NCBI GenBank assembly: GCA_964057225.1
Contig: OZ059899.1
Span: forward strand, 4,774,001-4,838,000
Direction of reading: 5' to 3'
Length of the DNA stretch: 64,000 nt
DNA from: Auanema rhodensis
Taxonomy: Eukaryota; Animalia; Nematoda
Within the stretch, counting starts at the first letter, position 1. Each line of letters starts with the position of its first letter. The notes below the pieces were generated by a model that saw only the letters and a program-made list of their open reading frames with translations, made no database searches and was not told the origin of the DNA. Made by a program: the position numbers and the translations under genes. This document shows, in pieces, positions 47,302-63,724 of this stretch.

Positions 47302-50300
47302 ATGAGTATGCTGTTATCACCTCAACAGTTCACCAGATTAAGTGAATATGCAGCTCGTAGGTAGAATATAATTCGGTCTGAATACTTTTTTTTTGAGATT
47401 CAACGCAAAAAGTGAAAGAGATGCTTTGTGAATTTCAAAGGGATGGACGATTTGTTCCTTATTTACAGGAAGATGTCCAGGTGCTTCATTTTTTATTAGT
47501 TTTATTAGGACTAAATATTTTCAATATTTTAGGAAGGACAATCCATTAGCTTTGAAGGAGTTAGGTTGTTTTTGCAGGATTACTTTGAAGATGAACTACC
47601 AGCTGAGATGTTAGAACAGCTTTTCTTGTCTTTTTGTAAGCCGGGGGGGAAAGGTGAAACTCACACAATTAGCAAAAAAAGAATAAAAACATTTCAGAAC
47701 GACGTACCAGTCTCCTAGAAGATGCGTTTCAGTCTATGCGTTATCGTTTTAGCGAAAATCTCCATTCATTAGCCGGGCGTTTAGAACGTTTTAGTCTTCT
47801 TCACTTAGACAGCTCGGGGTCAAGCAGCTCAGGAATTGGACCTGGCTCTTGCAGTCAAACTTCAGGAAGATCACCTTCATCCGTACCATCACGACTTGCT
47901 AAACGTTTAGCAAGTACTGTCGGACAGAGCAAAGGAGCTTCAGTCAAGTCATCAATGGGAATGACTGGATCAGTTACTGATACTGCTCGAATGGTGGCAG
48001 TCTATTCTGATTTGAGAATTCCGTTAAAACCACTCATTTGTACATTATCTTTATTAGAAGCTGATACACCAGAAAATAAGTTGGAGGGTTTGTTTTATTT
48101 AGTTAAAGGAGACATAGAGATATAAGGGTTGTTTTAGTTGTTTTTCATGTTTATGATTCTGATGGAAACGGATACTTGGATAAAGCCGAAATTGACAGCA
48201 TTATTGGCCAGATGATGACAGTAGCACGATATAAGCAATGGGATACAACCGAACTAGAAGAGGTTCCTTACTTTTTGTATTATCATTTTTATTCGTTTTG
48301 AAATTGTTTATTAAGCAATAATTTAGATTTTGCGACAAATGATGACAGATATTGATTATGATAGTGATGGGATTGTTTCGTTAGAAGAATGGAAAAGAGG
48401 TGGAATGACAAACATACCACTTCTAGTCCTTTTGGGTCTTGATACGGTATTAATAAAAATATCTTTTGCATAGTGTTATTTGAATATTCAGTCATTGCAA
48501 TTTGCTGAAATGAAAGAAGATGGTAATCATGTGTGGCGATTAAGGCATTTCTCAAAGCCAAATTATTGTAATGCTTGTTGTTCACTATTAGTTGGCTGGG
48601 GAGGTAAGCAAGGATTGAGCTGCTCACGTATGTTTTATTTTTTAAAATTTGTATAAGATTATCAAATAATGATGAAGAAATATCATATGTTACAGTTTGC
48701 AAGTATACCGTTCATGAACGATGTGTAAGAACAGCTGCTAGTAACTGTATAAAAACCTTTTCAGTGCGTACATCCACAGTAGGTAAACTCATTTATAACT
48801 TTCTTAAGTTTAAAACACAATTTATTGTTCAGAAAAATTGTATCATCATTGGCAAGATGCAAATACAACATCTAAATGTATTAAATGTCATGGAACTGTT
48901 GGAGCCTTTCAAGGAAAACGATGTCGTTGGTGTCATAATTATGTGAGTTATTTGAACTTATTTTTCTCCTTTTTCAGCTTTTTCAATTTTTAAATTAAAA
49001 TTAAATTAGGTTCATCACCGCTGTATGTCTTCTTTGCCACAAGAATGTAACATGGGTACTTTGGCTTATCACATTTTACCTCCAACTCACATTTTTCCTG
49101 CATTTCTTGAAAGAAAATCTTGTTCACATAAAAGTTTTCAACCACATTGTAATAGTTTATTGCAGGTTTCATGTGACTTTGTTTAATCATTCTATATTTC
49201 AATTTTTAGGCGATATCTCCAGGTCCAAATGTTCGTCCTTTACTAGTTTTGGTTAATCCAAAAAGTGGAGGAAAACAAGGAATACGAATTTTACAAAAGT
49301 TTGCCCATATGTTGAACCCGCGCCAGGTTTATGATTTGAGCAAGTTTGGTCCTGAACCAGGGTAGCCATAAAATCGTGAAACTTCAATGATTTTGCTGCC
49401 ATAGATTGGATCTTTTCTCTGCAATTCCGCATTGTAATGTACTAGTTTGTGGAGGTGATGGTACAATAGGATGGGTACTTGAATCAATGGGTATTAAAAA
49501 TATAGAAATTTGAAGACAATTGGTTTTAGATAAAATAAATTTTCCTCACGGTAGACCTCCTGTGGCTATTTTACCATTAGGAACTGGAAATGATCTAGCA
49601 CGGTTTGTATTTTCTGCTTTCTAAGCCGAATTTCATAAATTTTCTGTTTAGTTGTTTAAGATGGGGTGGTGGATATGAAAATGAAAGTCTTCATAAAATT
49701 CTGCATCAAATTGAGCATGCTACAACAGTAAAAACAAGAATTTTCTTAATTGATGATTGCTAATTTCTTTAGATTCATATGGATAGGTGGCAAATTAAAA
49801 TTGAACCTACTGAAAATACTAATAATGCAGATGAAAAGTGGGAACAACCACCGTATACTATAATTAACAATTATTTTTCAATTGGAGTGGTAATATTTAC
49901 TGCAGAAAATTCAATTATCAATTAACACATATTTTGGGATGCTTCGATTGCCCACCGATTTCATGTTATGAGAGAACGATATCCAGAGAAATTCAACAGC
50001 CGCATGAGAAATAAGCTTTGGTATTTCGAATTAGGTACAAGTGAAACATTAAGTGGATCATGTAAAAACCTTCATGAACAAATCGACATTTTGGTTATTC
50101 ATAATGATATTGCGGCTAATTTATAAAAAATATTTCAACAGTGTGATGGAGAATCTATTGATCTTGGTCAGGATGCAAGTTTAGAAGGAATTGCACTGCT
50201 TAATATACATTCAATTTATGGGGGATCTAATTTGTGGGGTAGCAGCAGAAAGGCAAGCTCTATAGGCTTTAATATATTAGAATTAATACCGTAATAGAAA

Positions 50301-50789
50301 CGATTACCTGGATTGTTTCCTATTACAAGGCGAAATTCCGATCATTTACATAATCGAGTTCAAGATGTAGGAGATGGATTAATAGAGGTAATTAACGATA
50401 TACAGGTCATAAATATAGAGAAAAATATTTCCAATTTAGGTAGTTGGATTAGAATCCGCTATCCAAATGGGACAAATAAAAGCTGGAGTTCGAGATGCAC
50501 GTCGTTTGTCGCAATGTGCCACCGTTGTAATCCAGTAAGCATGATTGCTTTATCAATTTTTAAAAAAAATAACTCGATTTAGAACTCATAAAGCGTTTCC
50601 AATGCAAATAGACGGAGAGCCATGGATGCAACCTCCTTGTATTATTCAGATAACTCATAAAAACCAGGTTAAAATGCTTATGGGTAATTATAGCTCTAAC
50701 TCATATCGAAATATTTCATCTTTCCAGCTCCAAAAAAAAGAAACTCATGGTGGAATATAAATCATCAAACTCAATCTGAAGATAATTAA
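47302..50789 (+). CDS. dgk-3: Type I diacylglycerol kinase (EF-hands, two C1 domains, catalytic domain); about 21 exons
   Basis: [97 protein letters not shown]|[23 protein letters not shown]; closely matches recalled C. elegans DGK-3. Confidence 0.94.
49890..49937 (+). other. dgk-3: Non-canonical GT-GG intron in dgk-3 (48 nt)
   Basis: ...ATT GGA GTG|gtaatatttactgcagaaaattcaattatcaattaacacatattttgg|GAT GCT TCG... restores the conserved SIGV-DASIAH. The intron contains an in-frame TAA. Confidence 0.7.
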
Positions 50790-51423
50790 ATTATGAGATT
50801 CGGATACACTATGAATTGCTCAATTACAGATCTCCGAAAGACAAAACATTAATATAATTTAAATTCCATTAGCCATTTCATATAAACTGTTTACCACTGT
50901 TCTTGTTAAATGTCATGCCAAGTATCTCTAATATCTACCATTTGCGAACAATTTATGAAATAACACTTTTCGCGCTCTTTTAATTTTTATGATTCATGAA
51001 CAAATTGAATTAATTATCATTGTAAACGATTGTCAAGTGATTATACGTTAACAAAATTCAAAGAATAACATAAAAACAAAGGAGCATATGAAAACATAAG
51101 TTTGAAGAATTAAGACGTTCAAAGTATCAAAGTAATCAATTATTGGAAAACTGAAATCATTAAACTATTGTGGGAATACTGTAATGGAACTTAGAAAGAA
51201 ATAAAACATGGTTTTTTTGATCCATTACTGGATTATCCTTAAACGAAAGTCCGTAAGTAAGTGACGTATTCATTTTTTATACTTAAATGATTATATGATG
51301 AAAACATAATGATTACTAAATTCAAAAGATTTTATTTAACAAAATATAAGAAATTGACGTTAAATTATAGTTAACATTACGTATTGAACCCCGCCCCTTT
51401 TTGCGCCGGCAGTGCAGGGAGTG

Positions 51424-54400
51424 TTATTTACGTACTTTCTCCTTATAATGCACTTTAAACCAGGCTAATAGCCTATTAAGAGATTCAAACATGATATAGC
51501 GAAACCGCAAACCTTCAGGAGTAACTGTAACAAGATGAATAAGAATTCGAAAACCCTTTAGATGTTTACCTGTGATATACTCGTGCTTAGGTCTACCTGT
51601 GAAATATGACAATACAAATTTACCGGCCCATTCGTTTACTGCTGGGGTGAAAGAGTATCTTAATCAGAATCATATTTTTATATAAACACTGCATTCACTT
51701 ACGGAAATCGTGATGGAGCTTTTCGTTTTTCTTCAGCTAGATGCTTTACAATGGCTTCCATATTATCACCGTATATGTTCTCAACGAAGCACTAAACAAC
51801 AAAATCATGATGGAAGAATTGTCCAACATACCTTGTGTTGAATGATTTCACGAGCATTGGCGGCCATAGGCTGAATCCATCGCGCAAGAATTTCGTTGAG
51901 ATCTTCAAATTCTTCTCTTCTAAATTAACATGTTTATTTATATATTAGTGAAAAGATTATACCTATCCCTCGTTTCAATATAAAGTTTTTTACCAAGCGT
52001 GAATGGTTGTTCCTTTTCTTCCTCGAACACGTCAATGTTCTGTAGGACACCTTCAGCAACTTTCCAAGTTATCGTTAAACGATCAGTTCCCTTGGATGAA
52101 GGACGAATAACTACATCACCCTAAAAAGTAAAATAATGCTTTCGATCAAAAAATTCGAAGCATACTTGTTCCATCTTACTTAACAATCTTTCAGCATCAG
52201 CAAAAGTAATATTATAAAAATTAGGATGTTGAATAACCCGCTTCACCCATTTCGTTTCTCTTTGCTGAAAAAAAAAGATAGATCTTTTATGATCATATAG
52301 CAAACCTTCTTCATTTGTTGCTTCAATAGCTCATCCTGTTGAATGTCTTCTTGTTCTGCATCATTATCCCAGTTAGGATCCTTTTGGTCGTTAGTATCTT
52401 TGTTAAGATCAGACGTTCGGCTAGAAAGTGAGCAAGACATCTTTATGGGATCAATTTTGATTATTCGACACCAAATAAGACCATTTTTCTAGAACATTTA
52501 TATTTTTCAATCAACTTGACCGTTTGAATTACCTGCACTTTCTCAAGGGGGTTTTTGAAAGAATCTGGATTATCACTGAGCATTTTATTATGAATAAACC
52601 CAGTTACATCGTTTTCCAATCGAACTCTAACACCAACTGGAACACCTGGGCAACCACCAAACCGAACATCCTAGAAAATATGCAAATATAAGAAGTATGA
52701 CAATATGATATTTACTTTAGTAGAAGTGTGATTCCATAATTCTTTCATCTCGTGGAATGATGTATGACAATGCTTACATACCAGCATATTCGCGGAATTG
52801 CGATTCTAAAAACAAACTTTAGAAATTATATTTACTAAAACTTCTTACGTGAGACTCATCCATTCGTTCCTCATCGGAAAGTTTTTTATATTGGACACCA
52901 ATAACTGTTCCCAATACTCTCCGACCTTCAGCAAAATACTTAGAACCACCACACAGTAAGGAAAACAGATCCCAAAATTATAATTATAAAAAATATTCAC
53001 CCAATTTAAAATCAACAAACCTCTTGAGAAGGGGGAAAGAAAGGAGCTCTAGTATCCTTGTACCTCTGATTGAGTTCGGCAGCAATGTCGTAAAGAGTGT
53101 CTTTTTTCTCTCCAAATCCTTGTCGTTTCAATTCTTCTGCAAAAGCATCAAGATCAAGATCTCTCAAACGATCAGGTGTTTGAAGAATTTCCTCCAAAGC
53201 AGCGGTTGGATCAGTGTTATCATCTGCCTATTAAAAGTAACATGTTATTCTTCACTTAATTTGAACATTTACTTCAATAGCATCAACTGCCATTTTTCTG
53301 GCCCACTCATATGTTTCGGGGTGAACTCTAGAGCCATCTAATACCTCAACATAAGCATCAGTCTTCTCGGCAACCTAAATTAAGCTTTTTTTCTTCGAAT
53401 TTTTACGAGTATGGTACCTTATGTGCATCTATTTTGATAAAACCTGCACAATTCATGAATACTTTTGGGCCCATTTTACAAAGAGTGACGAGCTTTGTAC
53501 GACTTTCCAACAAATTATCATGCTGTTTAAGAGTTTTCAAGAGGAACCCTGATTTTCTGGGCCCCAAACCAGCAACAAATTGCAATAAATTAGATGAATG
53601 ATTATGTTCTAGGCATTTGTTAACATCGACTCCTACTTCATTGACTTTAGAAATAAGTTCATGACTGAGATACTCAGCGAGCTCGTCCTAAAACGATTAT
53701 AGAACGGAATCTTGACAGTGTAGCACACCTTGTTGATCTCCTTTTGCAGAGGATGAAACGACAAGCACATAAGATCTTCTTCGTGATTACACATATGAGC
53801 TATTTCTATTAATGGATCAAGTAAGAAGCGAGCAAGTGACACAGATTGTCGCAACAAAGGAGGGTAATCTGGATGTTCAGCCTAAGAAAACCAATAAATA
53901 TCCGTCAACTATTCTAAAACTTACAAAAGCTTGTCTGGAATGCATATAAACCTTAGCAGCTTCGTTATTCAAAATCACCACATTTGGTCTACGAGTGATT
54001 GAATCAGATTCCATAAGTTGACGAAGAGCTTCCTAAAGCATGAATCAGTAATCACATAATTCAAAACAAGATCAAAATTAAGAAAAAAAAGCACCTCGAT
54101 ATCTCGTTGAAGTCGGATGGCGTCCATATTTTCTGCAGATAATCCTATGACATGAGGCCGTTTTCGTTCAATAAATTTTTTTAAATTAACAATACAATCC
54201 TACAAAAATAAATTTCTTGAAATAATATGGAGCATAAAAACCTTTTCTCTAGTCATAGAATCAGGAGGAGGACCTCGCTGTGTGAAATTAACTAATCTAA
54301 CATAATCTACAACAGCACCATTTCGATCAACCATAACACCAAAAGAAGCCTCATTAGGATCTGTTGGGTATGATATTGCCATTACTCGCGTTTCACTCTT

Positions 54401-57400
54401 AATCAAATGAATGTGTAAAGACAATTAAGACTTTCATACATACCATTTTACTGAATTCTTCATCCTCTTCTTCGATCTCTTCATCTGATGGTTTAAATGC
54501 AGCATGCTCTAAACTTTCGGCGAGCTTTTTCATGCATTTCTTAAACGAAAAAAAGAAATAGAAAACAGAACAGACTATATACCATAATAACGCTCCTTCT
54601 GGACTCCTCTAACAAACGATCAGAAAGTTCTTTCTCGAAATAAGGGATTAACATGCCTTCCAAGGCTAATCTTACAGCCCGTTCACGAATTTCATTCCAA
54701 CCTTCAACAAGCTCACTGTATTCGTCCTAAAATTGCAAAATGATTCTGATATAATAGCTGGTAAACAAACCTTTTTAAAAGGTCCATCGGATAAAATTCT
54801 ATCAACCAGTGTGCCATTCGACTCTTTGTCATATGCAGTGTCACAAGAAAGGGTGTATAGCATGTTGCCCTGATCTTTCATGAGTTTAAAATATAAAAAA
54901 TCTTCATATTCCAGATCACGTATATCTTTTTCTTTCAAATATCTGGAACAAAATCAAGCTAATTTGTATATGCGAAACGATAGTTAAACCTATGATTCCA
55001 CAATTGATGAGTATCATCCATTTGCTCCCTACCCTGTTTAGTAGGTCTGGCATTAATCTTTACTCGCCGCCGATATAAAGTTCGTACTCTACTTCGAACC
55101 TTAAAGAATTCAATAAATCAGATAAAATCGGTACACAATAGCAACAAACCAATGGCTCACAACTAATTTCTTTAGCCATCATATACACAGCACCGTTAAC
55201 AACATCATCAATAGATGGAAACGCATTTGTGATATAATCCTCTGCAGCTTTGAGCACCGGTGTCTACAGAAAGTTGGAATTAGCTATGAAATAAGATGCA
55301 TCAAATAATACCGGATCCTGATTAACATCATGCTTTTTCCAATCAAGATTTTCAGCAAACTGACGCGAAGTCAAACCAAACCGAGAAACCATATCTCCAA
55401 TACCGCATTCAATACATAGCTATTAATACTAATAATGACTTAATAAGCAATCAATACGATTACCTGGTATTTATCACTACGTAAGCATTGTTTGAAGCGA
55501 GTTGCAAGTGTTCCTATCTCATCTCCCTCAGTCTGAATTAGTGGTTAAGATGAATACTTTAATGTTATGGAGTATACCTGTCGACTTCTTTCCCATTCTT
55601 GCATTCTAGCAATGTCTGGGCCATAATAAAGTTGGAACTTAGAATGAGCATCCGCTAAAGCTTCAGAAGTATCCACAGAATATACCCTGCATATTAGAGC
55701 ATGATTAAAACCATTTTTAAAGAAAAGTGTGAATACTCAATGATGTCAGCTTCAGTTAGTGGTCTTCTGGACAAAGGTTCTCCATCCAATAAATAGCTCT
55801 GCATACGTTTCATCAATTCAATAAGCTAAGATAGAGATTTAACTTAATGCTTTGAAACCTTTTAAGAAAATACCTTCTCTTTTCTTCCCTGCAGATGGCA
55901 CCATTTTTCATCATATTCATAAATTCTCCAAAGTTCTCTTATATCAAAGACAGAGCCCACAGATTCTTTACGATAGAAAGCTATGAAAGGAACCTAATGA
56001 AGTGAAACAGAAATAAGTAGTATATAAAGAAAAAACCCTACTTCGAACAACTGATTTCTGATAAATTTGAGAACTTCTTTAATTGTATAAATAGATTTCT
56101 CCTCCCTTTCAACTCGCTCCATTTCATTTATATCTTTCAAATAAGAAGGAGTTTTTGGTTCCTCAACAAATCAAAAAAGTTTAATTGTAAAAAATATGTA
56201 ACAAAAATACCTGTCTTGATAGCATATCTTCATCTGTGAATGCATAACGGAATATCCACTTGGCTTCTAGTTCTAATTCCGTTTCTGTAGCTTCAGTAAC
56301 AGGAGTTTTACGAAGTTGGAATCTAAAATTTAAAAAAAAACGTTGTGAAGTTCCAGAACAAAGCAATAATACCTCTCAGGTTTATCTTCTAATTGAATTT
56401 TTTTGTCCCGAGGAGCCAAAAATCCTTTCTCTAATTCAACAGGCTCCATTGTATCAAGTAAAGTACTTTTTTTCGTTTCTTTACGAACTCTTCGTATCTT
56501 TAATAATATAAAAACTTTTTTCAAGAAAAATTAGTAAAGACATACTCTTTCGCCATCTTCATCTACAATTTCGTCTTCTTCATCTTCAAACTGATCTTCA
56601 TCTTCATCGTAAAAATCATCCAAATTAAAATCTTCTACTCCGAAAATTTCACGAGCTTCATCCAAAGCTCTTAAAAATGAAAATAATTAGTGAATAAATA
56701 CTAAATAGAAAAATACTTACCCTTCTGGTACATTCAAATCTCGCCGTTTAGATTTTTTATAAAATGGTTTTTCACCGTCTTCATTTACAATGAAATCATT
56801 TTCTAAAAAAACAAAAATACAAAAACTGAACTAGTTAATAGACTTACCACTCTGTTCAGAGTCGGAATATTCGTCTCTATCTTCATACCGTTCTTCACGT
56901 CGGGGACGAGGATCACTTGAAGGGCCATCATCATACTAACCAAGTTAAATATTAATAAAATTAAACTAAAACGACTACCCCAGAAAAAATATTTTTGCCA
57001 ATTTTAACTTTATCTGAAACATCATTGTCATCCTGTTCATCATCGGACTCTATCCTTGCTTTAACAGTTTTGGATCTCTCCGGAAGATTTAGATTTTCCT
57101 AAATTCAAATGAGTTTACATGGTAGATTTAAATATGTATCCTACATCAATCAAATCTAAATCATCTTGATCTAACTCTTCTTCTTCTTCAGATTTTTCTG
57201 ATTTATCATCTTCTTCTTCTGGTTCGTCCTAAAAACTTTTATATCACGCATATCTTTTTTCTTAATAGCAACCTCATCGGCAATGAACCCCTTCATTTCC
57301 TCATCAACCTCTTCTTCCTCATCATCATCTTCATCACTAAAATTGTTTTTCCCAATCAAAAATTTCAACTTTCCAATTTTCATTTTTCAAAATTTAAATA

Positions 57401-57542
57401 CGTGCCTACTCTGCACAACTCTAGAAGGTTTCCTTTTTTTGTCTTTCTTCTTTTGCATTTTTGCCTTTTTAGCTCTAGGCTGTTGATCATCTGATGAATC
57501 TGATCCGTCAGATTCTATTGCTTGGTGTTGAATAAAGTCCAT
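51424..57542 (-). CDS. emb-5: Transcription elongation factor / histone chaperone SPT6 (EMB-5); more than 30 exons; 3' end possibly alternatively spliced
   Basis: Acidic N-terminus [12 protein letters not shown]; [11 protein letters not shown]; [11 protein letters not shown]; [16 protein letters not shown]; [21 protein letters not shown]; [14 protein letters not shown]; tandem SH2 domains ([33 protein letters not shown]). Confidence 0.95.
52972..53020 (-). other. emb-5: Non-canonical GT-GG intron in emb-5 (49 nt)
   Basis: ...TCT CAA GAG|gtttgttgattttaaattgggtgaatattttttataattataattttgg|GAT CTG TTT TCC TTA CTG...; the intron contains no AG dinucleotide. Confidence 0.6.
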
Positions 57543-57819: not shown

Positions 57820-60800
57820 ATGGAGGAAGAGCCTGGTGAGCGGACCCCTGCTTTAGGGGGTCAAAAAGCTCCAGATCGTCCGTCCAGAGTACCGTCCATG
57901 CGTGGATCATCACCTCGACGACTACCACTCTTTGAACGTGCTTCTTCCCGTTGGTGGAATCCGCAATTCCGATCGCCCAGTTTGGAAGCGCAGTATTGGA
58001 AATGCTCCTTTTCACAGCTCAGGGACCGTTTTCGTTCCGGATTAATCTATATTTCCTTCGTCTGCGTAGCCTGGGCTATCTATTTGGCCATATTTAATAG
58101 AGCTAGTATTCATCATTGGGTAAGTGCAAATTTCGATTAAATCTAGCTTCCGTACACTATTAGCCGACGACATGCTTAACGTATTTTGATTGTTATTGAT
58201 AGGACACAGCTGCTTACAATTTGCATCACACATGCATTCTTAGAAGCTGCACAAAAACAAATGCTGACTTAAACTAAATATAAAAGAACAAAACATTACT
58301 GATAAAAATTATATCATAAGTGATTGATATTGAGCAAAATTCAAACATAATACAAATAAATAGTTTGAGACAATATGCTCTATTGATAACCTTCTATGCA
58401 TATAATCCTTTTAAACAGAATACTATAAAAATCTAAAAATAAACTACTCTTATTAATAAGGAATACGATCTATTTTTGATACAAAGCATGTACTAAGCTG
58501 AGTTTCCTAAATCAATATGTTAATAGTATATTATCTATTGTTAAAGTTTTCCTCCAAAAATTAACGGAATATGAATATATAAAAAATAATATAGAATAAA
58601 AGTTATATAAACGTATAATATATTATATAATGGTATACATATTGCAGATAACTGTGGTAGCTTTAATATCAACATGCTGCCTGATGCTTGTATTTACTAT
58701 GTTCTCAACACAATATCAAAGATTCTATATGCCAACTTCTTTTCTCTGTACTTTCATAATATCGTTGGTCACACTACTAATATTTTCGGCAGGGTCGGCT
58801 GATGCCTTTATGACCCCTGTGGCTAGTTTAGTAACAAGTTTCCAGGTTTGTTTCGGCTTAGAACACGATATCAACATAGTTATTCTATAGGTTGTAATGT
58901 TGATTTACACAGTTATACCATTACCTCTCTATCTTTGCATAATTATTGGAATGATATACTCAGTTCTTTTTGAAACCCTTAGTAGTAGTAATCACAGTTT
59001 CGACAACATACCATATATAAAGCTGGTGTTGCATTTTGGAGTTCATCTGCTTGGGGTTCATCTGTTTATTCTGACCCAGGTATAAAAATAGACACAAAAG
59101 AAAAACCTAATTACTTATTTTATAGGTTCGCCAGAGAAAAACATTTTTAAAAGTGGGACAATCACTTTTGGCTCGTAAAGATTTAGAACTTGAAACACAG
59201 TTTAAAGATCATATGATTCAATCTGTTATGCCTAAAAAGGTAATAAAGTATCTTTTTATGTAGTTTTACCATCATATTTGTAGGTTGCTGATGAATTATT
59301 GAAAGATGCTTCTGAACTACGCCGTCCATCTGCAAGTCAAGGATCTCATTGCCGAACAAGTAACGGAACTTCCAATGGTGCAAATGAAGATGCAGGTACA
59401 GAATTATTTGAATATCGTTGTTATTATGTTCAAATTTCTAGGCACAATCGTGTTGCCGAATTCCGTGCCTGGGCATCGTAAATTCCGTCCTTTCACTATG
59501 AATCTAATGACTAATGTGTCCATTCTGTTCGCTGATATTGCTGGATTCACTAAAATGAGTTCAAATAAGAGTGCCGACGAGCTTGTGAATTTGCTAAACG
59601 ACCTCTTCGGAAGGTATAGTGGTGTATCAAGCACATACGTTTATATATATCAATATCGGAATAGGGTCATAATTTCGTGTACATTGTACTTTTTATAGAT
59701 TTGATCATCTTTGTCGCCTTTGTGGTTTAGAAAAGATCAGTACGCTTGGTTTGCGAATAAAAGGAAAAAATAAAAAAACGGTTTCATGTTCAGGCGATTG
59801 TTATTATTGTGTTGCTGGTTGTCCGGAGCCATGTGATGATCATGCAAAGAGGACAGTGGAAATGGGATTAGAGATGATTACAGCTATTCAGCAGTTTGAT
59901 ATAGATAGAGGGCAAGAAGTTAACATGCGAGTTGGTATTCACACGGGAAAGGTATTCATCGTTTTCAAAATATTTGTGAAATCCTAATGATGAACTAATT
60001 TAGGTTATGTGTGGTATGGTTGGAACGAAAAGGTTCAAATTCGATGTGTTCTCAAATGATGTTACACTGGCTAACGAGATGGAATCCAGTGGTTTGTTCC
60101 CATGAGTCAAATAGAGCTTTCAAATTCGTAATTAGGTGTTGCGGGGCGAGTCCATATTTCGGAAGCTACAGCCAAATTTCTGATGGATGGGGATTACATA
60201 CTCGAACAAGCTGATGATTACTCAGGTTTGCCTTTAATATATAGATGTTACAATAAGAATCTTATTGACTTGGTGATGCTCTCGATGTTACTTGAGATTT
60301 ATTGCATTTGGAGAGCGTTTTCTGTTCCAATAGGAATATTTCTATCTAATGTTATGGATTCGAAAAATCTAATTGCGTTTCAGGGCCTTATCGAATGCAA
60401 GTGCAAGGAACGGAGCGAAGAGTTAAACCGGAAAGCATGAAGACTTACTTCATCAAATGTAGAGCATCGGAAGTCGAAGAGCCAGTGAAAGTAACAACTG
60501 TGACTGAAACTCAATCGGGACTCTCCAAAAATGGCTCGTTCAAAAAAATGACACTCAAGCAGGTTGAGATAGTATATGATACTCGTTATAACAAAATACT
60601 TATATAGAAATTGGCTGGAAAACTGAAAATGTCTCATACTAATTCCTACCCCGTTCGAACCAGCAATGGTGGATCTCTCCGGATGAAGTTAGCTGAGAGA
60701 AATCGTTCAACTCAACTTCTGGCCAAGGAGGTTTTTTTCATGGAAGATTCATGAATTATTATGTGTTTGTGTTTAGTCAAATTCAATTTGTGTTATGGAG

Positions 60801-63724
60801 GACAACAGGAAGTCGGCTTCTTTGCAAGCGTTAGCTACAAACGCCTTCCATGGTATTATAGAAGAAAACAATCCATCTTTTGAAAATTCGAAAACTGCAG
60901 GGAGCAACACAGAAACTCGTAACTCATATGCAGAAGATTTGTGCGAAAGAGCCGTTCCTGGAAGCATTAGTGGTAGTAACAGTATGAGAGGTTCTAGAAG
61001 TAGTGGTCTTCAAGTATGTCTTGAAAAGTCAAGAGCTCCATAACTTCAACTATTTTAGGCTTCGATACATGAAGCCAATTCTGATCTCAATAGTGTTGGA
61101 GGCTTAGATACAGCTATTTCTCATCATCATAACGCAGCCTCATTAACAAGGTTCAAATGGCATCTTCAAAAGTTAATATTGTCATATAATTAAAGATTTG
61201 ATACGGATAATAAGGATTTCGATCAACGACTTGCCATGGTTATTTCTCAAGGGGAAAATAGTTTCGACAAAGGTTTCTGGGGGCACCATCACAGTCTAAA
61301 TAAGTGGACCTTGAATTTTAATGAAAAGGTATTCTGTGTTCCAAAGATATAAACTCTTACTTGTTTTTTATTTCAGGAAGTTGAAGATGAATACAGAAAC
61401 CATTTTGCTGATTCTGCTGAACGTGGTAGCGGAATTCAAAACAATTCCATTAGAAGACATCAGGTTTCTTTTTTTAATTTTTTTATTTCATTAATACTTT
61501 ATAGGACCTTGCCCGCATCAATGATTCGTCATCAACACCACAATATAGATATTCAGGAGTTTTTATAGGTTTGAAAAAAATGTATCTGTCTAATAACTTT
61601 CACTGTTTTAGATATAATTGTAGCTTCGATGATTTTCCTTGTAGCTTCAGTTGTTGTATTTATGTCTGCAAGTGAAATAACTGCTCGTTCAGTGATATAC
61701 TTTGGTGTGGCCCTCATGCTTATTATTGCTTCAGTAGGCTTCATTGGTAAGTTTTCACTTATAGGGTTTATTTTCTTTAATTTCAATTCAAGGTATTCCC
61801 TTGCTTAGTCGAAAACCTGTTATGCCGTGGTTGAATTCGTGGAAATCTCGCCATTTAATTGGTAAGACTGACTGACATGCCATTTATTCATAAAGGTGTT
61901 TTTAGGATCTATTTTAATGGGCCTCTCAGTAGGAATTGCTATCTGTATGGTTCCATTATGCATTTATGAAATGTGCTCTTTCGACATTCTTGTTTCGATG
62001 CTCGATCAAAGACTAGTCTTTTCATACATCATCACTCTTTCCTTATTTGCTCACTGCAACTTTTCTCAGTTGGCTGCTTGGCCCAAGACTGTTCAGGTTT
62101 TTATATTATATTCATATAAGTTTAATGAAAACAATTTTTAGTGTGGCATTATTGGTCTTTTCCATGCTGCTGTTGTGTTCTACTGTCAACACAATATCCA
62201 CGAGAATCTGGTAAAAACTTATAAATGATTTATAAGTACAAATGCTTTTCTAGGAAACTGGAGCTTGTACTAACAATACCGTTCCTCTCAACACAGTAAA
62301 CGTGAAAAATGATACTGAACGTCTTCTGTTATCTCCACTTTTCCTGTGGGAAATAATGCTTGATGTTGTGCTTTCAATCATTTTGGTCGGATTTTTGAAT
62401 TATCAGGTTTATTATTCCTATTTTCGTTCTTATTTTTTATTTTTTCAGTTTGAAGCTGCTTTCCGTATGTCTTTCTTCGGTGATATTCAGGCTAAAAGAG
62501 ATACTCACCGAATGCAGGTGATTATGAAAAAAATCAATTTTAACTTGAATTATTTGTTATTTTTTTTAGATTGTGCGTGATCAAGCTGATTGGCTATTAA
62601 ATAACATTATCCCAGCACATGCGGTTGAAACCTTGAAAACTGACACCAAATACAGGTATGTTTTTAAAATTTTTCTCTATAATTTTATAAAATGGTTCCT
62701 AAAATTTGGAAATCTTATGATTTTCTAAAGAAAACGCTAGAATGGCTAAAAATAGCCAGGTGAAGTGACGTGTCAGCTACTTGTTTCTTACGCCTCCTTG
62801 AATAATTTGTTATTTTCGTTTCAAATAAACTTTTTTGCATTTACAATTTTTAGCTATTTTTAACTTTTTTATTCTAGTGAAAATCATGAATCTACTGCAG
62901 TTTTATTTGCTTCAATTACGAATTGGAATGATATGTATGAAGAAAATTTTGAAGGTGGAAGAGAATTTTTGCGTGTTTTGAATGAGGTGAGTTATTAAAG
63001 CATTTGAGGATTTTATAGATGTACTTACTGTACAGGTTATTGGAGACTTCGATGAACTTCTTGATCGTCCTGAGTTTTGTCATATCGAAAAGATTAAGGT
63101 ACATTGTTAAAATGAAATTGTAAAATATTTGTTTGCTTCAGACAATTGGTGCATCTTATATGGCAGCCAGTGGATTGAATCCAGAACAAAAAAGAAATAT
63201 GAAACATCCTAAAGAACATCTGTATCAAGTACTTTTCTCTTGTTATTGTCGTGAAACGATTATTATTCTTTATAGATGGTGGAATTTGCATTAGCTATTC
63301 AGCATGCCTTGAGCGTTTTTAATGAGGATCTTCTCAATTTCGACTTTGTTTGCAAGCTTGGACTGAATATAGGTTTAAGAGATTTCTCTGTAAACTAAAT
63401 TGTAGCATACCTTAATTCAGGTCCTGTCACTGCTGGTGTTATTGGTACAACCAAACTGTATTATGATATTTGGGGTGATACTGTTAACATAGCCTCCCGA
63501 ATGTATAGCACTGGCGTACTGAATCGAATTCAAGTAAATTAACTTCTATATGATAACTTCATAACTTCTATATACACATAAATTTATAGGTTTCACAGCA
63601 CACTAAAGATATATTGATGGATCGTTACGATTTTGAGTATCGAGATCATATAGAAGTTAAAGGTATTGATGGTGGTATGGATACCTACCTATTAGTCGGA
63701 AGAAAGCCCGAACAATCAGCGTAA
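57820..63724 (+). CDS. acy-1: Transmembrane adenylyl cyclase, ADCY9 type; about 30 exons
   Basis: [14 protein letters not shown]...[14 protein letters not shown]; C1 domain [61 protein letters not shown]; C2 domain [42 protein letters not shown]; TAA at 63722-63724. Confidence 0.96.

What the first reader, a model, noticed from the sequence alone, without database searches (positions are those of the whole stretch)
52972..53020. Second GT-GG intron with the same ATTTTGG|GAT context in essential emb-5/SPT6
Seen: on the minus strand a 49-nt intron with no AG ends ATTTTGG|GAT, the same 10-nt context as the dgk-3 site 3 kb away on the other strand. Splicing at GG gives [21 protein letters not shown], which aligns with the recalled SPT6 segment before the S1 domain (human EEIFNML, C. 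elegans ELLYDLL). A canonical in-frame AG 33 nt downstream (ttctaag) would delete those 11 residues. TTTTAG|GAT is written normally in acy-1 (~61900), so this is not a blanket miscall of that k-mer. Inference: two such sites in 64 kb suggest a recurrent class of GT-GG introns, possibly from a modified U2AF35/UAF-2 or second-step factor. This is the best candidate for an undescribed system in the window.
Basis: partly seen in the sequence, partly recalled or inferred. Interest (0 to 1): 0.75.

Follow-up and report, generated by a model that had tools for sequence, protein, structure and literature searches.

The report
Worm SPT6 intron ending in GG
In this roundworm's only copy of the essential gene SPT6/emb-5, one ordinary short intron ends in GG instead of the near-universal AG, and the coding sequence only makes sense if it is still cut out exactly there, but no RNA or read data could be reached to prove it.

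Summary
On the minus strand, 53020-52972 is a 49-nt GT...GG intron with no AG inside. The next AG (52940-52939) would remove 11 codons in frame.

Evidence that the GG end is used:
- The sister species Auanema sp. JU1783 has an intron at the same codon, ending in canonical TTTCAG|GA.
- The exon starting at 52971 continues at least 8 nematode SPT6 proteins without a gap and fills a block conserved from nematodes to insects and vertebrates.
- Those codons differ from JU1783 at 9 bases but change only 1 of 8 residues (P about 2e-5).
- The bases around GG match the acceptor consensus better than 35 of the gene's 36 normal acceptors. The downstream AG scores below all 36.
- SPT6 is single-copy in this genome.

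The shared 10-mer with dgk-3 is this species' consensus acceptor, TTTTAG|GA, with one A-to-G change. It is not a special motif. The idea of a modified U2AF35 was not tested.

I could reach no RNA or raw reads, so a base-call error or unfixed allele remains possible at roughly 12%.

The scan has already flagged AG-less introns elsewhere in this genome: dgk-3, crld-1, RNA polymerase I and one other window.

The parts
51193..57542 (-). emb-5/SPT6 coding span: 38 exons and 37 introns as aligned to the Auanema sp. JU1783 SPT6 protein P0215
   Evidence: My spliced alignment script found 36 GT/GC-AG introns and one GT-GG intron, with no frameshift needed. It is the only SPT6 locus in the genome.
53021..53227 (-). 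Exon upstream of the site, 69 aa, ending ...[10 protein letters not shown]
   Evidence: It matches human SPT6 residues 1084-1149 at E = 4e-21 to 4e-20. It is 95.7% identical to P0215 residues 1021-1089.
52972..53020 (-). The 49-nt GT-GG intron (donor GTTTGTTG, 3' end ATAATTTTGG)
   Evidence: Read directly. The orthologous 42-nt intron in JU1783 sits at the same codon and phase and ends CTGATTTCAG|GAA. The length fits the gene's range of 40-69 nt, median 45.
52972..52973 (-). GG in place of the acceptor AG. The G at 52973 is the changed base at position -2.
   Evidence: The alignment with JU1783 places it on the A of that species' CAG. The flanking context scores 10.7 bits, above 35 of the 36 canonical acceptors of the gene.
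52939..52971 (-). 33 nt coding [11 protein letters not shown], kept only if the GG end is used
   Evidence: It fills the conserved (E/D)LFxLLTKE block in 18 SPT6 proteins. Against JU1783 it shows 9 nucleotide differences but 1 residue change in 8 alignable codons, P about 2e-5 by simulation.
52849..52971 (-). Exon downstream of the site, 41 aa ([41 protein letters not shown])
   Evidence: It begins at the residue directly after the upstream exon's last residue in P0215 (1089/1090) and in at least 8 other nematode SPT6 proteins.
52939..52940 (-). Nearest downstream AG (ggttctaAG|t), the canonical alternative acceptor. It is also part of a conserved Lys codon.
   Evidence: Its context scores -5.0 bits, below all 36 canonical acceptors. 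The resulting intron would be 82 nt. JU1783 keeps the same AAG as a coding Lys codon.
49890..49937 (+). Second GT-GG intron, in dgk-3 (48 nt, ends CATATTTTGG|gatgct)
   Evidence: Read. JU1783 has CATCTTTCAG|GATGCC at the aligned place. It is the only true non-AG end among 20 dgk-3 introns.
61862..61905 (+). Canonical acy-1 intron ending TTTTTAG|gatcta, used as a comparison

Best explanation
This is an ordinary, ancestral, major-spliceosome (U2-type) short intron of the single-copy essential gene emb-5/SPT6. Its acceptor AG has become GG by one A-to-G transition at position -2 in this lineage. I infer that it is still removed at the old boundary, joining 53021 to 52971.

The likely reason is the way rhabditid nematodes define the 3' end of their roughly 45-nt introns. 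U2AF binds the U-tract that sits directly against the intron end (UUUU[C/U]AG|R), and the end lies at a short, fixed distance from the branch. Here every other position of that signal is close to optimal (TTTT at -6 to -3, G at +1). The last intron base, G at -1, is kept. No better site competes nearby.

Shown here: the sequence, the homology of the intron position, the coding constraint on the 33 nt behind it, the strength of the context, and the single-copy status.

Inferred: that the RNA is really joined there, and the mechanism of tolerance. I expect somewhat lower efficiency, with minor products from the downstream AAG (a 33-nt in-frame loss) or from intron retention (a premature stop, so probably nonsense-mediated decay).
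For: - The sequence is as described.
- JU1783 has an intron at the same codon and phase with a canonical TTTCAG|GA end. Introns at 35 positions match between the two genes in position and phase.
- Taken exon by exon, the upstream exon ends at residue N and the exon starting at 52971 begins at N+1. This holds in JU1783, Heterorhabditis, Necator, Haemonchus, Ancylostoma, Parelaphostrongylus, Angiostrongylus costaricensis, C. remanei and an unnamed metaclust sequence (P0193).
- The 11 residues fill a block present in all 18 SPT6 proteins aligned, from nematodes to insect and vertebrate-like sequences.
- The segment shows 9 nucleotide differences but 1 residue change against JU1783, P about 2e-5.
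- The context outside -2/-1 scores 10.7 bits, above 35 of 36 canonical acceptors. The alternative AG scores -5.0 bits, below all 36.
- A 49-nt intron fits the gene's lengths (40-69 nt, median 45). An 82-nt intron does not.
- There is only one SPT6 locus in the 181-Mb assembly and one copy of this stretch.
- About 85 exons of three genes align with no frameshift, so the assembly is accurate at base level.
- The AG version of the 10-mer is common genome-wide (507 copies), so it is not blanket-miscalled.
- A second case lies 3 kb away, again with AG in JU1783.
- Literature: mutated C. elegans acceptors without AG are still spliced (Aroian et al. 1993 and Zhang & Blumenthal 1996, as cited in PMC10946897 and PMC4484395). 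A natural U2/U12-like non-canonical GT-GG intron is known in vertebrate BANP, with AG in fish (PMC4176328).
Against: - There is no RNA evidence for this junction. Three protein searches found no transcript-derived SPT6 fragment of this species. Those searches did not cover products of about 120-815 aa.
- There was no access to raw reads.
- The published C. elegans cases that I could confirm changed position -1 (G to A or C), not -2.
- From my own knowledge of spliceosome structures, the A at -2 helps dock the 3' splice site for exon ligation, and UGG acceptors are poor second-step substrates in yeast.
- The coding constraint measured over the whole divergence from JU1783 does not date the A-to-G change. 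A very recent or unfixed allele is not excluded.
- ATTTTGGGAT is more enriched over its reversed control (347 vs 78) than the AG version (507 vs 202). I cannot explain this. A context-specific miscall is one possible contributor.
Confidence: 0.72

Rival explanations
1. The G at 52973 is not the worm's fixed sequence. It is either a base-call or polishing error, or a rare or heterozygous allele picked up by the assembly. The real intron would then end in the consensus TTTTAG|G and be spliced normally.
For: - One base separates the site from the commonest acceptor of this species.
- Both GG sites share the same 10-mer, which is what a context-specific miscall would look like.
- ATTTTGGGAT is unexpectedly enriched genome-wide relative to its reversed control, 347 vs 78.
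- No reads could be inspected.
Against: - ATTTTAGGAT is written 507 times in the genome, and TTTTAGGAT is a normal acy-1 acceptor in this window, so any miscall is at most partial.
- About 85 exons of three genes align with no frameshift despite many A/T runs, so this is an accurate 112-contig assembly.
- Two errors landing on the -2 base of acceptors within 3 kb is very unlikely at normal assembly error rates.
- Other agents' unverified notes report RNA-confirmed AG-less introns with other end dinucleotides (CG, AT) in the same genome. One k-mer error cannot give that pattern.
Confidence: 0.12
2. The DNA is right, but the spliceosome mainly uses the next AG (52940-52939). The 82-nt intron is removed and this worm's SPT6 lacks the 11 residues [11 protein letters not shown].
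For: - The AG is in frame, 33 nt downstream.
- AAG acceptors are used elsewhere in the gene, at 7 of 36.
- Canonical spliceosomes strongly prefer AG.
Against: - Its context (GGTGGTTCTAAG|T) scores below all 36 real acceptors of the gene.
- An 82-nt intron would be longer than 35 of the gene's other 36 introns.
- The 33 nt show strong protein-level constraint against JU1783.
- They encode a block present in every SPT6 examined.
- The AAG is a conserved Lys codon that is exonic in JU1783.
- This is the only SPT6 gene.
Confidence: 0.08
3. It is a U12-type (minor spliceosome) GT-GG intron, like human ARAF.
For: GT-GG termini are a known non-canonical U12 class in mammals (PMC1557818).
Against: - The donor is GTTTGTTG, not the U12 GTATCCTT box (my knowledge).
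- The 49 nt hold no U12 TCCTTAAC-like branch box (my knowledge of the motif).
- No U12 introns or U12-specific factors have been found in C. elegans (PMC1557818).
- The orthologous JU1783 intron is an ordinary GT...TTTCAG intron.
Confidence: 0.01

Closest known systems
Natural U2/U12-like non-canonical GT-GG introns in vertebrates (BANP: GG in almost all vertebrates, AG in fish; PMC4176328)
   Same: A normal intron at a conserved position, where the acceptor A at -2 is G in one lineage and A in a relative. In BANP the GG end is seen in transcripts.
   Different: BANP is one of only 184 non-canonical sites found in the whole human transcriptome. Here two such introns lie within 3 kb, in very short nematode introns with a U-tract directly against the junction. 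BANP has RNA proof and this site does not.
AG-independent 3' splice site use in C. elegans mutants (Aroian et al. 1993; Zhang & Blumenthal 1996; cited in PMC10946897 and PMC4484395)
   Same: Rhabditid nematodes, short introns and a YYYNAG-type acceptor. Splicing continues at the old position when the AG is destroyed.
   Different: Those are induced mutations at the last base (AG to AA or AC) with reduced function. This is a natural, apparently fixed change at -2 (AG to GG) in the sole copy of an essential gene.
Canonical C. elegans 3' splice site UUUUCAG|R bound by U2AF (Hollins et al. 2005; PMC4889670)
   Same: The site keeps the U-tract and the +1 purine in near-optimal form. The neighbouring 36 introns of the gene follow the rule.
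   Different: The AG, described as invariant or perfectly conserved in C. elegans, is missing. This species also prefers T over C at -3.
U12-type GT-GG introns (human ARAF, SLC12A7; PMC1557818)
   Same: The same terminal dinucleotides.
   Different: There is no U12 donor or branch box, the host is a nematode, and the ortholog is a plain U2-type intron.

Membership tests
U2-type spliceosomal intron with a non-canonical GG 3' end | GT donor of U2 type, and length and composition like the neighbouring introns | tested here: met
   The donor is GTTTGTTG. The same 8-mer is used at emb-5 intron 55149-55100. The 49-nt length lies within the gene's 40-69 nt range.
U2-type spliceosomal intron with a non-canonical GG 3' end | Positional homology to a canonical intron in a relative | tested here: met
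   JU1783 has an intron at the same codon and phase ending TTTCAG|GA.
U2-type spliceosomal intron with a non-canonical GG 3' end | Nematode acceptor signal (U-tract against the junction, purine at +1) apart from the AG | tested here: met
   It scores 10.7 bits, higher than 35 of 36 canonical acceptors of the gene.
U2-type spliceosomal intron with a non-canonical GG 3' end | The junction is actually formed in mRNA | not testable with these tools
   No transcript-derived protein of this species was found in three searches. There is no read access. Usage is inferred from colinearity and codon-level constraint.
U12-type (minor spliceosome) intron | A GTATCCTT-like donor and a TCCTTAAC-like branch box close to the 3' end (motifs from my own knowledge) | tested here: not met
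   Neither motif occurs in the 49 nt. No U12 introns are known in C. elegans (PMC1557818).
SPT6 / EMB-5 transcription elongation factor gene | Colinear similarity to SPT6 along the whole protein | tested here: met
   The exon at the site hits human SPT6 chains at E = 4e-21. The whole JU1783 SPT6 (1483 aa, with the HTH_44, YqgF, HHH_7, HHH_9 and SH2_2 Pfam families on record) aligns across 38 exons.
SPT6 / EMB-5 transcription elongation factor gene | Single functional copy, so the site cannot be a decaying duplicate | tested here: met
   All 20 matches of P0215 in the 181-Mb genome fall in this one locus. The stretch is unique at DNA level.

The most novel reading that the evidence does not exclude
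This Auanema-like worm has a relaxed requirement for the 3' AG. Roughly 1-2% of its very short introns, including ones in single-copy essential genes, are fixed with non-AG ends and are still removed precisely. The 3' end would be set by the U-tract and by distance, not by the AG. That would make it a natural system for studying AG-independent exon ligation.
Probability: 0.5. Interest if true: 0.8.

Novelty: new member of a known kind. Interest (0 to 1): 0.58.

Why it matters
The terminal AG is one of the most invariant signals in eukaryotic gene expression, and gene predictors assume it.

- If this GG end is real and used, standard annotation of this genome will silently delete or scramble conserved protein segments. 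Here that would be 11 residues just before the S1 domain of SPT6.
- Together with the neighbouring dgk-3 case and the other AG-less introns noted in this genome, it would mark a nematode lineage in which U-tract-driven 3' splice site choice can do without the AG.
- That can be tested with junction reads and with minigenes exchanged with C. elegans.
- On its own, one GT-GG intron is a rare but known kind of exception.

Tried and rejected
- **RNA evidence.** Three homolog searches found SPT6 of many species, including the sister Auanema sp. JU1783, but no transcript-derived product of the window's species. The queries were the upstream exon, C. tropicalis SPT6 residues 1030-1210 and JU1783 SPT6 residues 1000-1200. 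Products of about 120-815 aa were never candidates, so this blank is weak.
- **PDB search with the short exon.** The 41-aa and 30-aa downstream exon pieces gave no SPT6 match (the 30-aa piece had one chance hit). They are too short.
- **Angiostrongylus locus.** The look-up for P0035 found no record.
- **Ab initio rebuilding of the JU1783 dgk-3 model.** Using codon usage and splice matrices, I never reached the annotated 829 aa. A conservation-aided version came within 2-16 aa and served only as an in-script guide. Its extra non-canonical calls were guide artefacts or lay in poorly conserved sequence. On inspection 49607-49637 was an artefact and 62660-62761 belongs to a larger intron; 58124-58177 and 58519-58641 were not resolved.
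- **Annotation-free ORF-join scan of the window.** The scan for non-AG acceptors did not separate signal from background. It counted 120 AG against 708 other ends, and frame-shifted controls gave similar totals. I dropped it.
- **uaf-2 search.** The zf-CCCH Pfam model returned 15 CCCH fingers, none U2AF35-like. This says nothing about whether uaf-2 is present or changed.
- **U12-type intron.** Rejected on the donor and branch motifs.
- **A special CA-to-TG double change.** Both GG sites show TGG where JU1783 has CAG. I rejected this as special because JU1783 CAG corresponds to window TAG in 14 of 23 orthologous emb-5 introns.
- **Literature.** I found no report of AG-less introns in Auanema.
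- **Joined spliced model.** Exons were searched one by one, by reference.

Full report
**What is there.** On the minus strand, the exon 53227-53021 ends ...[10 protein letters not shown]. It is followed by GTTTGTTGATTTTAAATTGGGTGAATATTTTTTATAATTATAATTTTGG (53020-52972, 49 nt, no AG), and then by GATCTGTTTTCC..., which reads [41 protein letters not shown] up to a GTAAGAAG donor. Reading through the intron gives a stop after two codons. The first AG downstream is at 52940-52939. It would make an 82-nt intron and remove 33 nt in frame. ATTTTGGGAT occurs twice in the window, here and at the dgk-3 site at 49931 (+). TTTTAGGAT at 61900 is the acceptor of a normal acy-1 intron.

**The gene and the organism.** The upstream exon matches human SPT6 residues 1084-1149 in solved Pol II elongation complexes, at E = 4e-21 to 4e-20. 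Searches with single exons, or with regions of proteins the tools returned, found SPT6 from many nematodes. They included a 1483-aa protein of Auanema sp. JU1783 (P0215) that is 95.7% identical to the upstream exon and 85% identical to the downstream exon. The window therefore comes from a related but different species. Its assembly is 181 Mb in 112 contigs. The JU1783 locus (L001) has the same gene order, acy-1, emb-5, dgk-3. Exons were searched one at a time by reference, and that joined step is left out.

**The intron is ancestral and its 3' end is homologous to a normal acceptor.** A DNA alignment of the two species shows an intron at the same place in JU1783: GAA|GTATGTAC...CTGATTTCAG|GAATTATTCAGT. 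The window's TTTTGG|GAT lies on JU1783's TTTCAG|GAA. I wrote a protein-to-genome spliced aligner that allows non-canonical ends at a penalty.
- On its own gene, P0215 gives 38 introns, all GT/GC-AG.
- On the window it gives 37 introns, of which 36 are GT/GC-AG. Only 53020-52972 is GT-GG, and no frameshift is needed anywhere.
- Introns at 35 positions agree in protein position and phase between the two species.
- The T at -3 is the local norm. JU1783 CAG corresponds to window TAG in 14 of 23 orthologous pairs.

A single A-to-G change at -2 therefore separates this site from the species' commonest acceptor.

**The 33 nt behind the GG are coding.**
- Taken exon by exon, the upstream exon ends at residue N of the orthologue and the exon starting at 52971 begins at N+1. 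This holds for JU1783 (1089/1090), Heterorhabditis, Necator, Haemonchus, Ancylostoma, Parelaphostrongylus, Angiostrongylus costaricensis, C. remanei and an unnamed metaclust sequence (P0193). The whole-genome six-frame search gives the same boundary.
- When the two exons are added as separate fragments to an alignment of 18 SPT6 proteins, the exon read from GG fills the block (E/D)LFxLLTKE. That block is present in all of them, from Trichinella and Plectus to Bombyx and a vertebrate-like sequence. The version starting after the downstream AG leaves an 11-column hole.
- Against JU1783, the eight alignable codons of the segment carry nine nucleotide differences (CTG/TTA twice, TCC/AGT, TTT/TTC, GAT/GAA) but only one conservative residue change. 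In 100,000 simulations, nine random changes gave one or fewer residue changes only twice, so P is about 2e-5. The segment has been translated for most of the time since the two species split.

**Splice-signal context.** I built a position matrix from the 36 canonical emb-5 acceptors, leaving out positions -2 and -1.
- The GG site scores 10.7 bits, above 35 of the 36 (median 5.1).
- The downstream AAG site (GGTGGTTCTAAG|T) scores -5.0 bits, below all 36.
- Intron lengths in the gene are 40-69 nt, median 45, plus one of 198 nt. So 49 nt is typical and 82 nt is not.
- The downstream AAG is also a Lys codon that is conserved and exonic in JU1783.

**Only one copy.** All 20 matches of P0215 in the genome fall in this locus, and the 451-nt stretch around the site is unique. 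This is therefore not a decaying duplicate. The sole SPT6 gene of the animal carries the GG. SPT6/emb-5 is essential in C. elegans (established knowledge).

**The neighbouring case and the local rate.** The dgk-3 intron 49890-49937 ends CATATTTTGG|GATGCT where JU1783 has CATCTTTCAG|GATGCC. I derived guide translations of the JU1783 dgk-3 and acy-1 genes inside scripts, using cross-species conservation.
- dgk-3 shows 20 introns, with this one GG. A second flagged site was a guide artefact and is a plain GT...TTTAG intron on inspection.
- The well-conserved part of acy-1 shows about 26-28 introns with no non-AG end.

That makes 2 of about 83 homology-supported introns in 16 kb. Both lie in the TTTT_G|GA context, which only about 7% of canonical acceptors here share. 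With two cases this is only suggestive, but it fits tolerance limited to the strongest sites.

**Error or real?** I had no reads.

Against an assembly error:
- The exons of three genes (about 85) stay in frame despite many A/T runs.
- The AG form of the 10-mer is written 507 times in the genome.
- Two hits on the -2 base of acceptors within 3 kb are not expected from random error.

Not resolved:
- ATTTTGGGAT (347 copies, reversed control 78) is more enriched than ATTTTAGGAT (507 copies, control 202). Coding use (ATT-TTG-GGA, TTT-TGG-GAT) may explain this, but I did not test it.

Other agents' notes on this genome report AG-less introns ending in CG, AT, TG and GG, some with transcript support. 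I could not verify those and treat them as leads only.

[quoted passage not shown] Mutated acceptors lacking AG are still used (Aroian 1993 and Zhang & Blumenthal 1996, as cited in PMC10946897). Natural GT-GG introns exist in vertebrates (BANP, PMC4176328). A 49-nt intron with an optimal U-tract, G at +1, a retained G at -1 and no competing site is the most favourable setting for such tolerance. A U12-type reading is excluded by the donor and branch motifs and by the host (PMC1557818).

**Verdict.** The reading that the intron ends at GG and is spliced there is well supported indirectly, at about 0.72, with about 0.12 for an error or unfixed allele and about 0.08 for main use of the downstream AG. 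The idea of a specific GT-GG class defined by the 10-mer is replaced by the consensus acceptor with one transition. The altered-factor hypothesis is untested. As a single site it is a new member of a known rare kind. The larger claim, that this genome tolerates AG-less acceptors at the percent level, remains open and would be of real interest.

Noticed in passing
window 62660-62877 (+), acy-1 intron: This unusually long intron (about 218 nt, GT...TTCTAG) holds blocks conserved with Auanema sp. JU1783, such as GCTAAAAATAG and CGCC..TTGAATAATTTGTT.TTTTCG. That is unlike the other introns, which do not align. It may be a regulatory element or a small RNA.
   Followed up: no
window 57405-57337 (-), first emb-5 intron: The GC-AG intron (gagtag|GCACGTAT) has an identical donor in JU1783 (L001 6138-6211). 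This non-GT donor is conserved between the species.
   Followed up: partly
window about 53120 (-); L001 10356-10397: JU1783 has a 42-nt intron after residue 1056 (AGACAA|GTATGACA...TTACCAG|GG) that the window lacks. This is an intron loss or gain between the two species, inside the exon just upstream of the GG intron.
   Followed up: partly
whole genome G000: ATTTTGGGAT occurs 347 times against 78 for its reversed control (4.4-fold). ATTTTAGGAT occurs 507 times against 202 (2.5-fold). The excess of the GG form is unexplained. In the places listed (first 100 only), matches start at 5.6 Mb of C1 and 3.3 Mb of C3, with none in C2, which hints at very uneven composition or withheld stretches.
   Followed up: no
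protein P0035 (Angiostrongylus cantonensis SPT6 model, UniRef A0A0K0DMN9): This gene model jumps from ...RPFTPL to KKLSRSLL..., skipping the same conserved LFxLL...VLGTV segment. It is either an annotation error or another awkward splice site at this spot. No locus was on record.
   Followed up: partly
window 58100-58650 (+), 5' part of acy-1: This stretch is poorly conserved with JU1783, and my guide-based alignment produced two non-canonical calls here (58124-58177, 58519-58641). They are most likely guide artefacts, but the exon structure here is unresolved.
   Followed up: no
window 50693-50727 and 50253-50297 (+), dgk-3: These are two GC-AG calls in dgk-3. The 35-nt one (attata|GCTCTAAC...TTTCCAG) is shorter than every other intron called in the three genes apart from the guide artefact and may be a mis-call near the C-terminus.
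   Followed up: no
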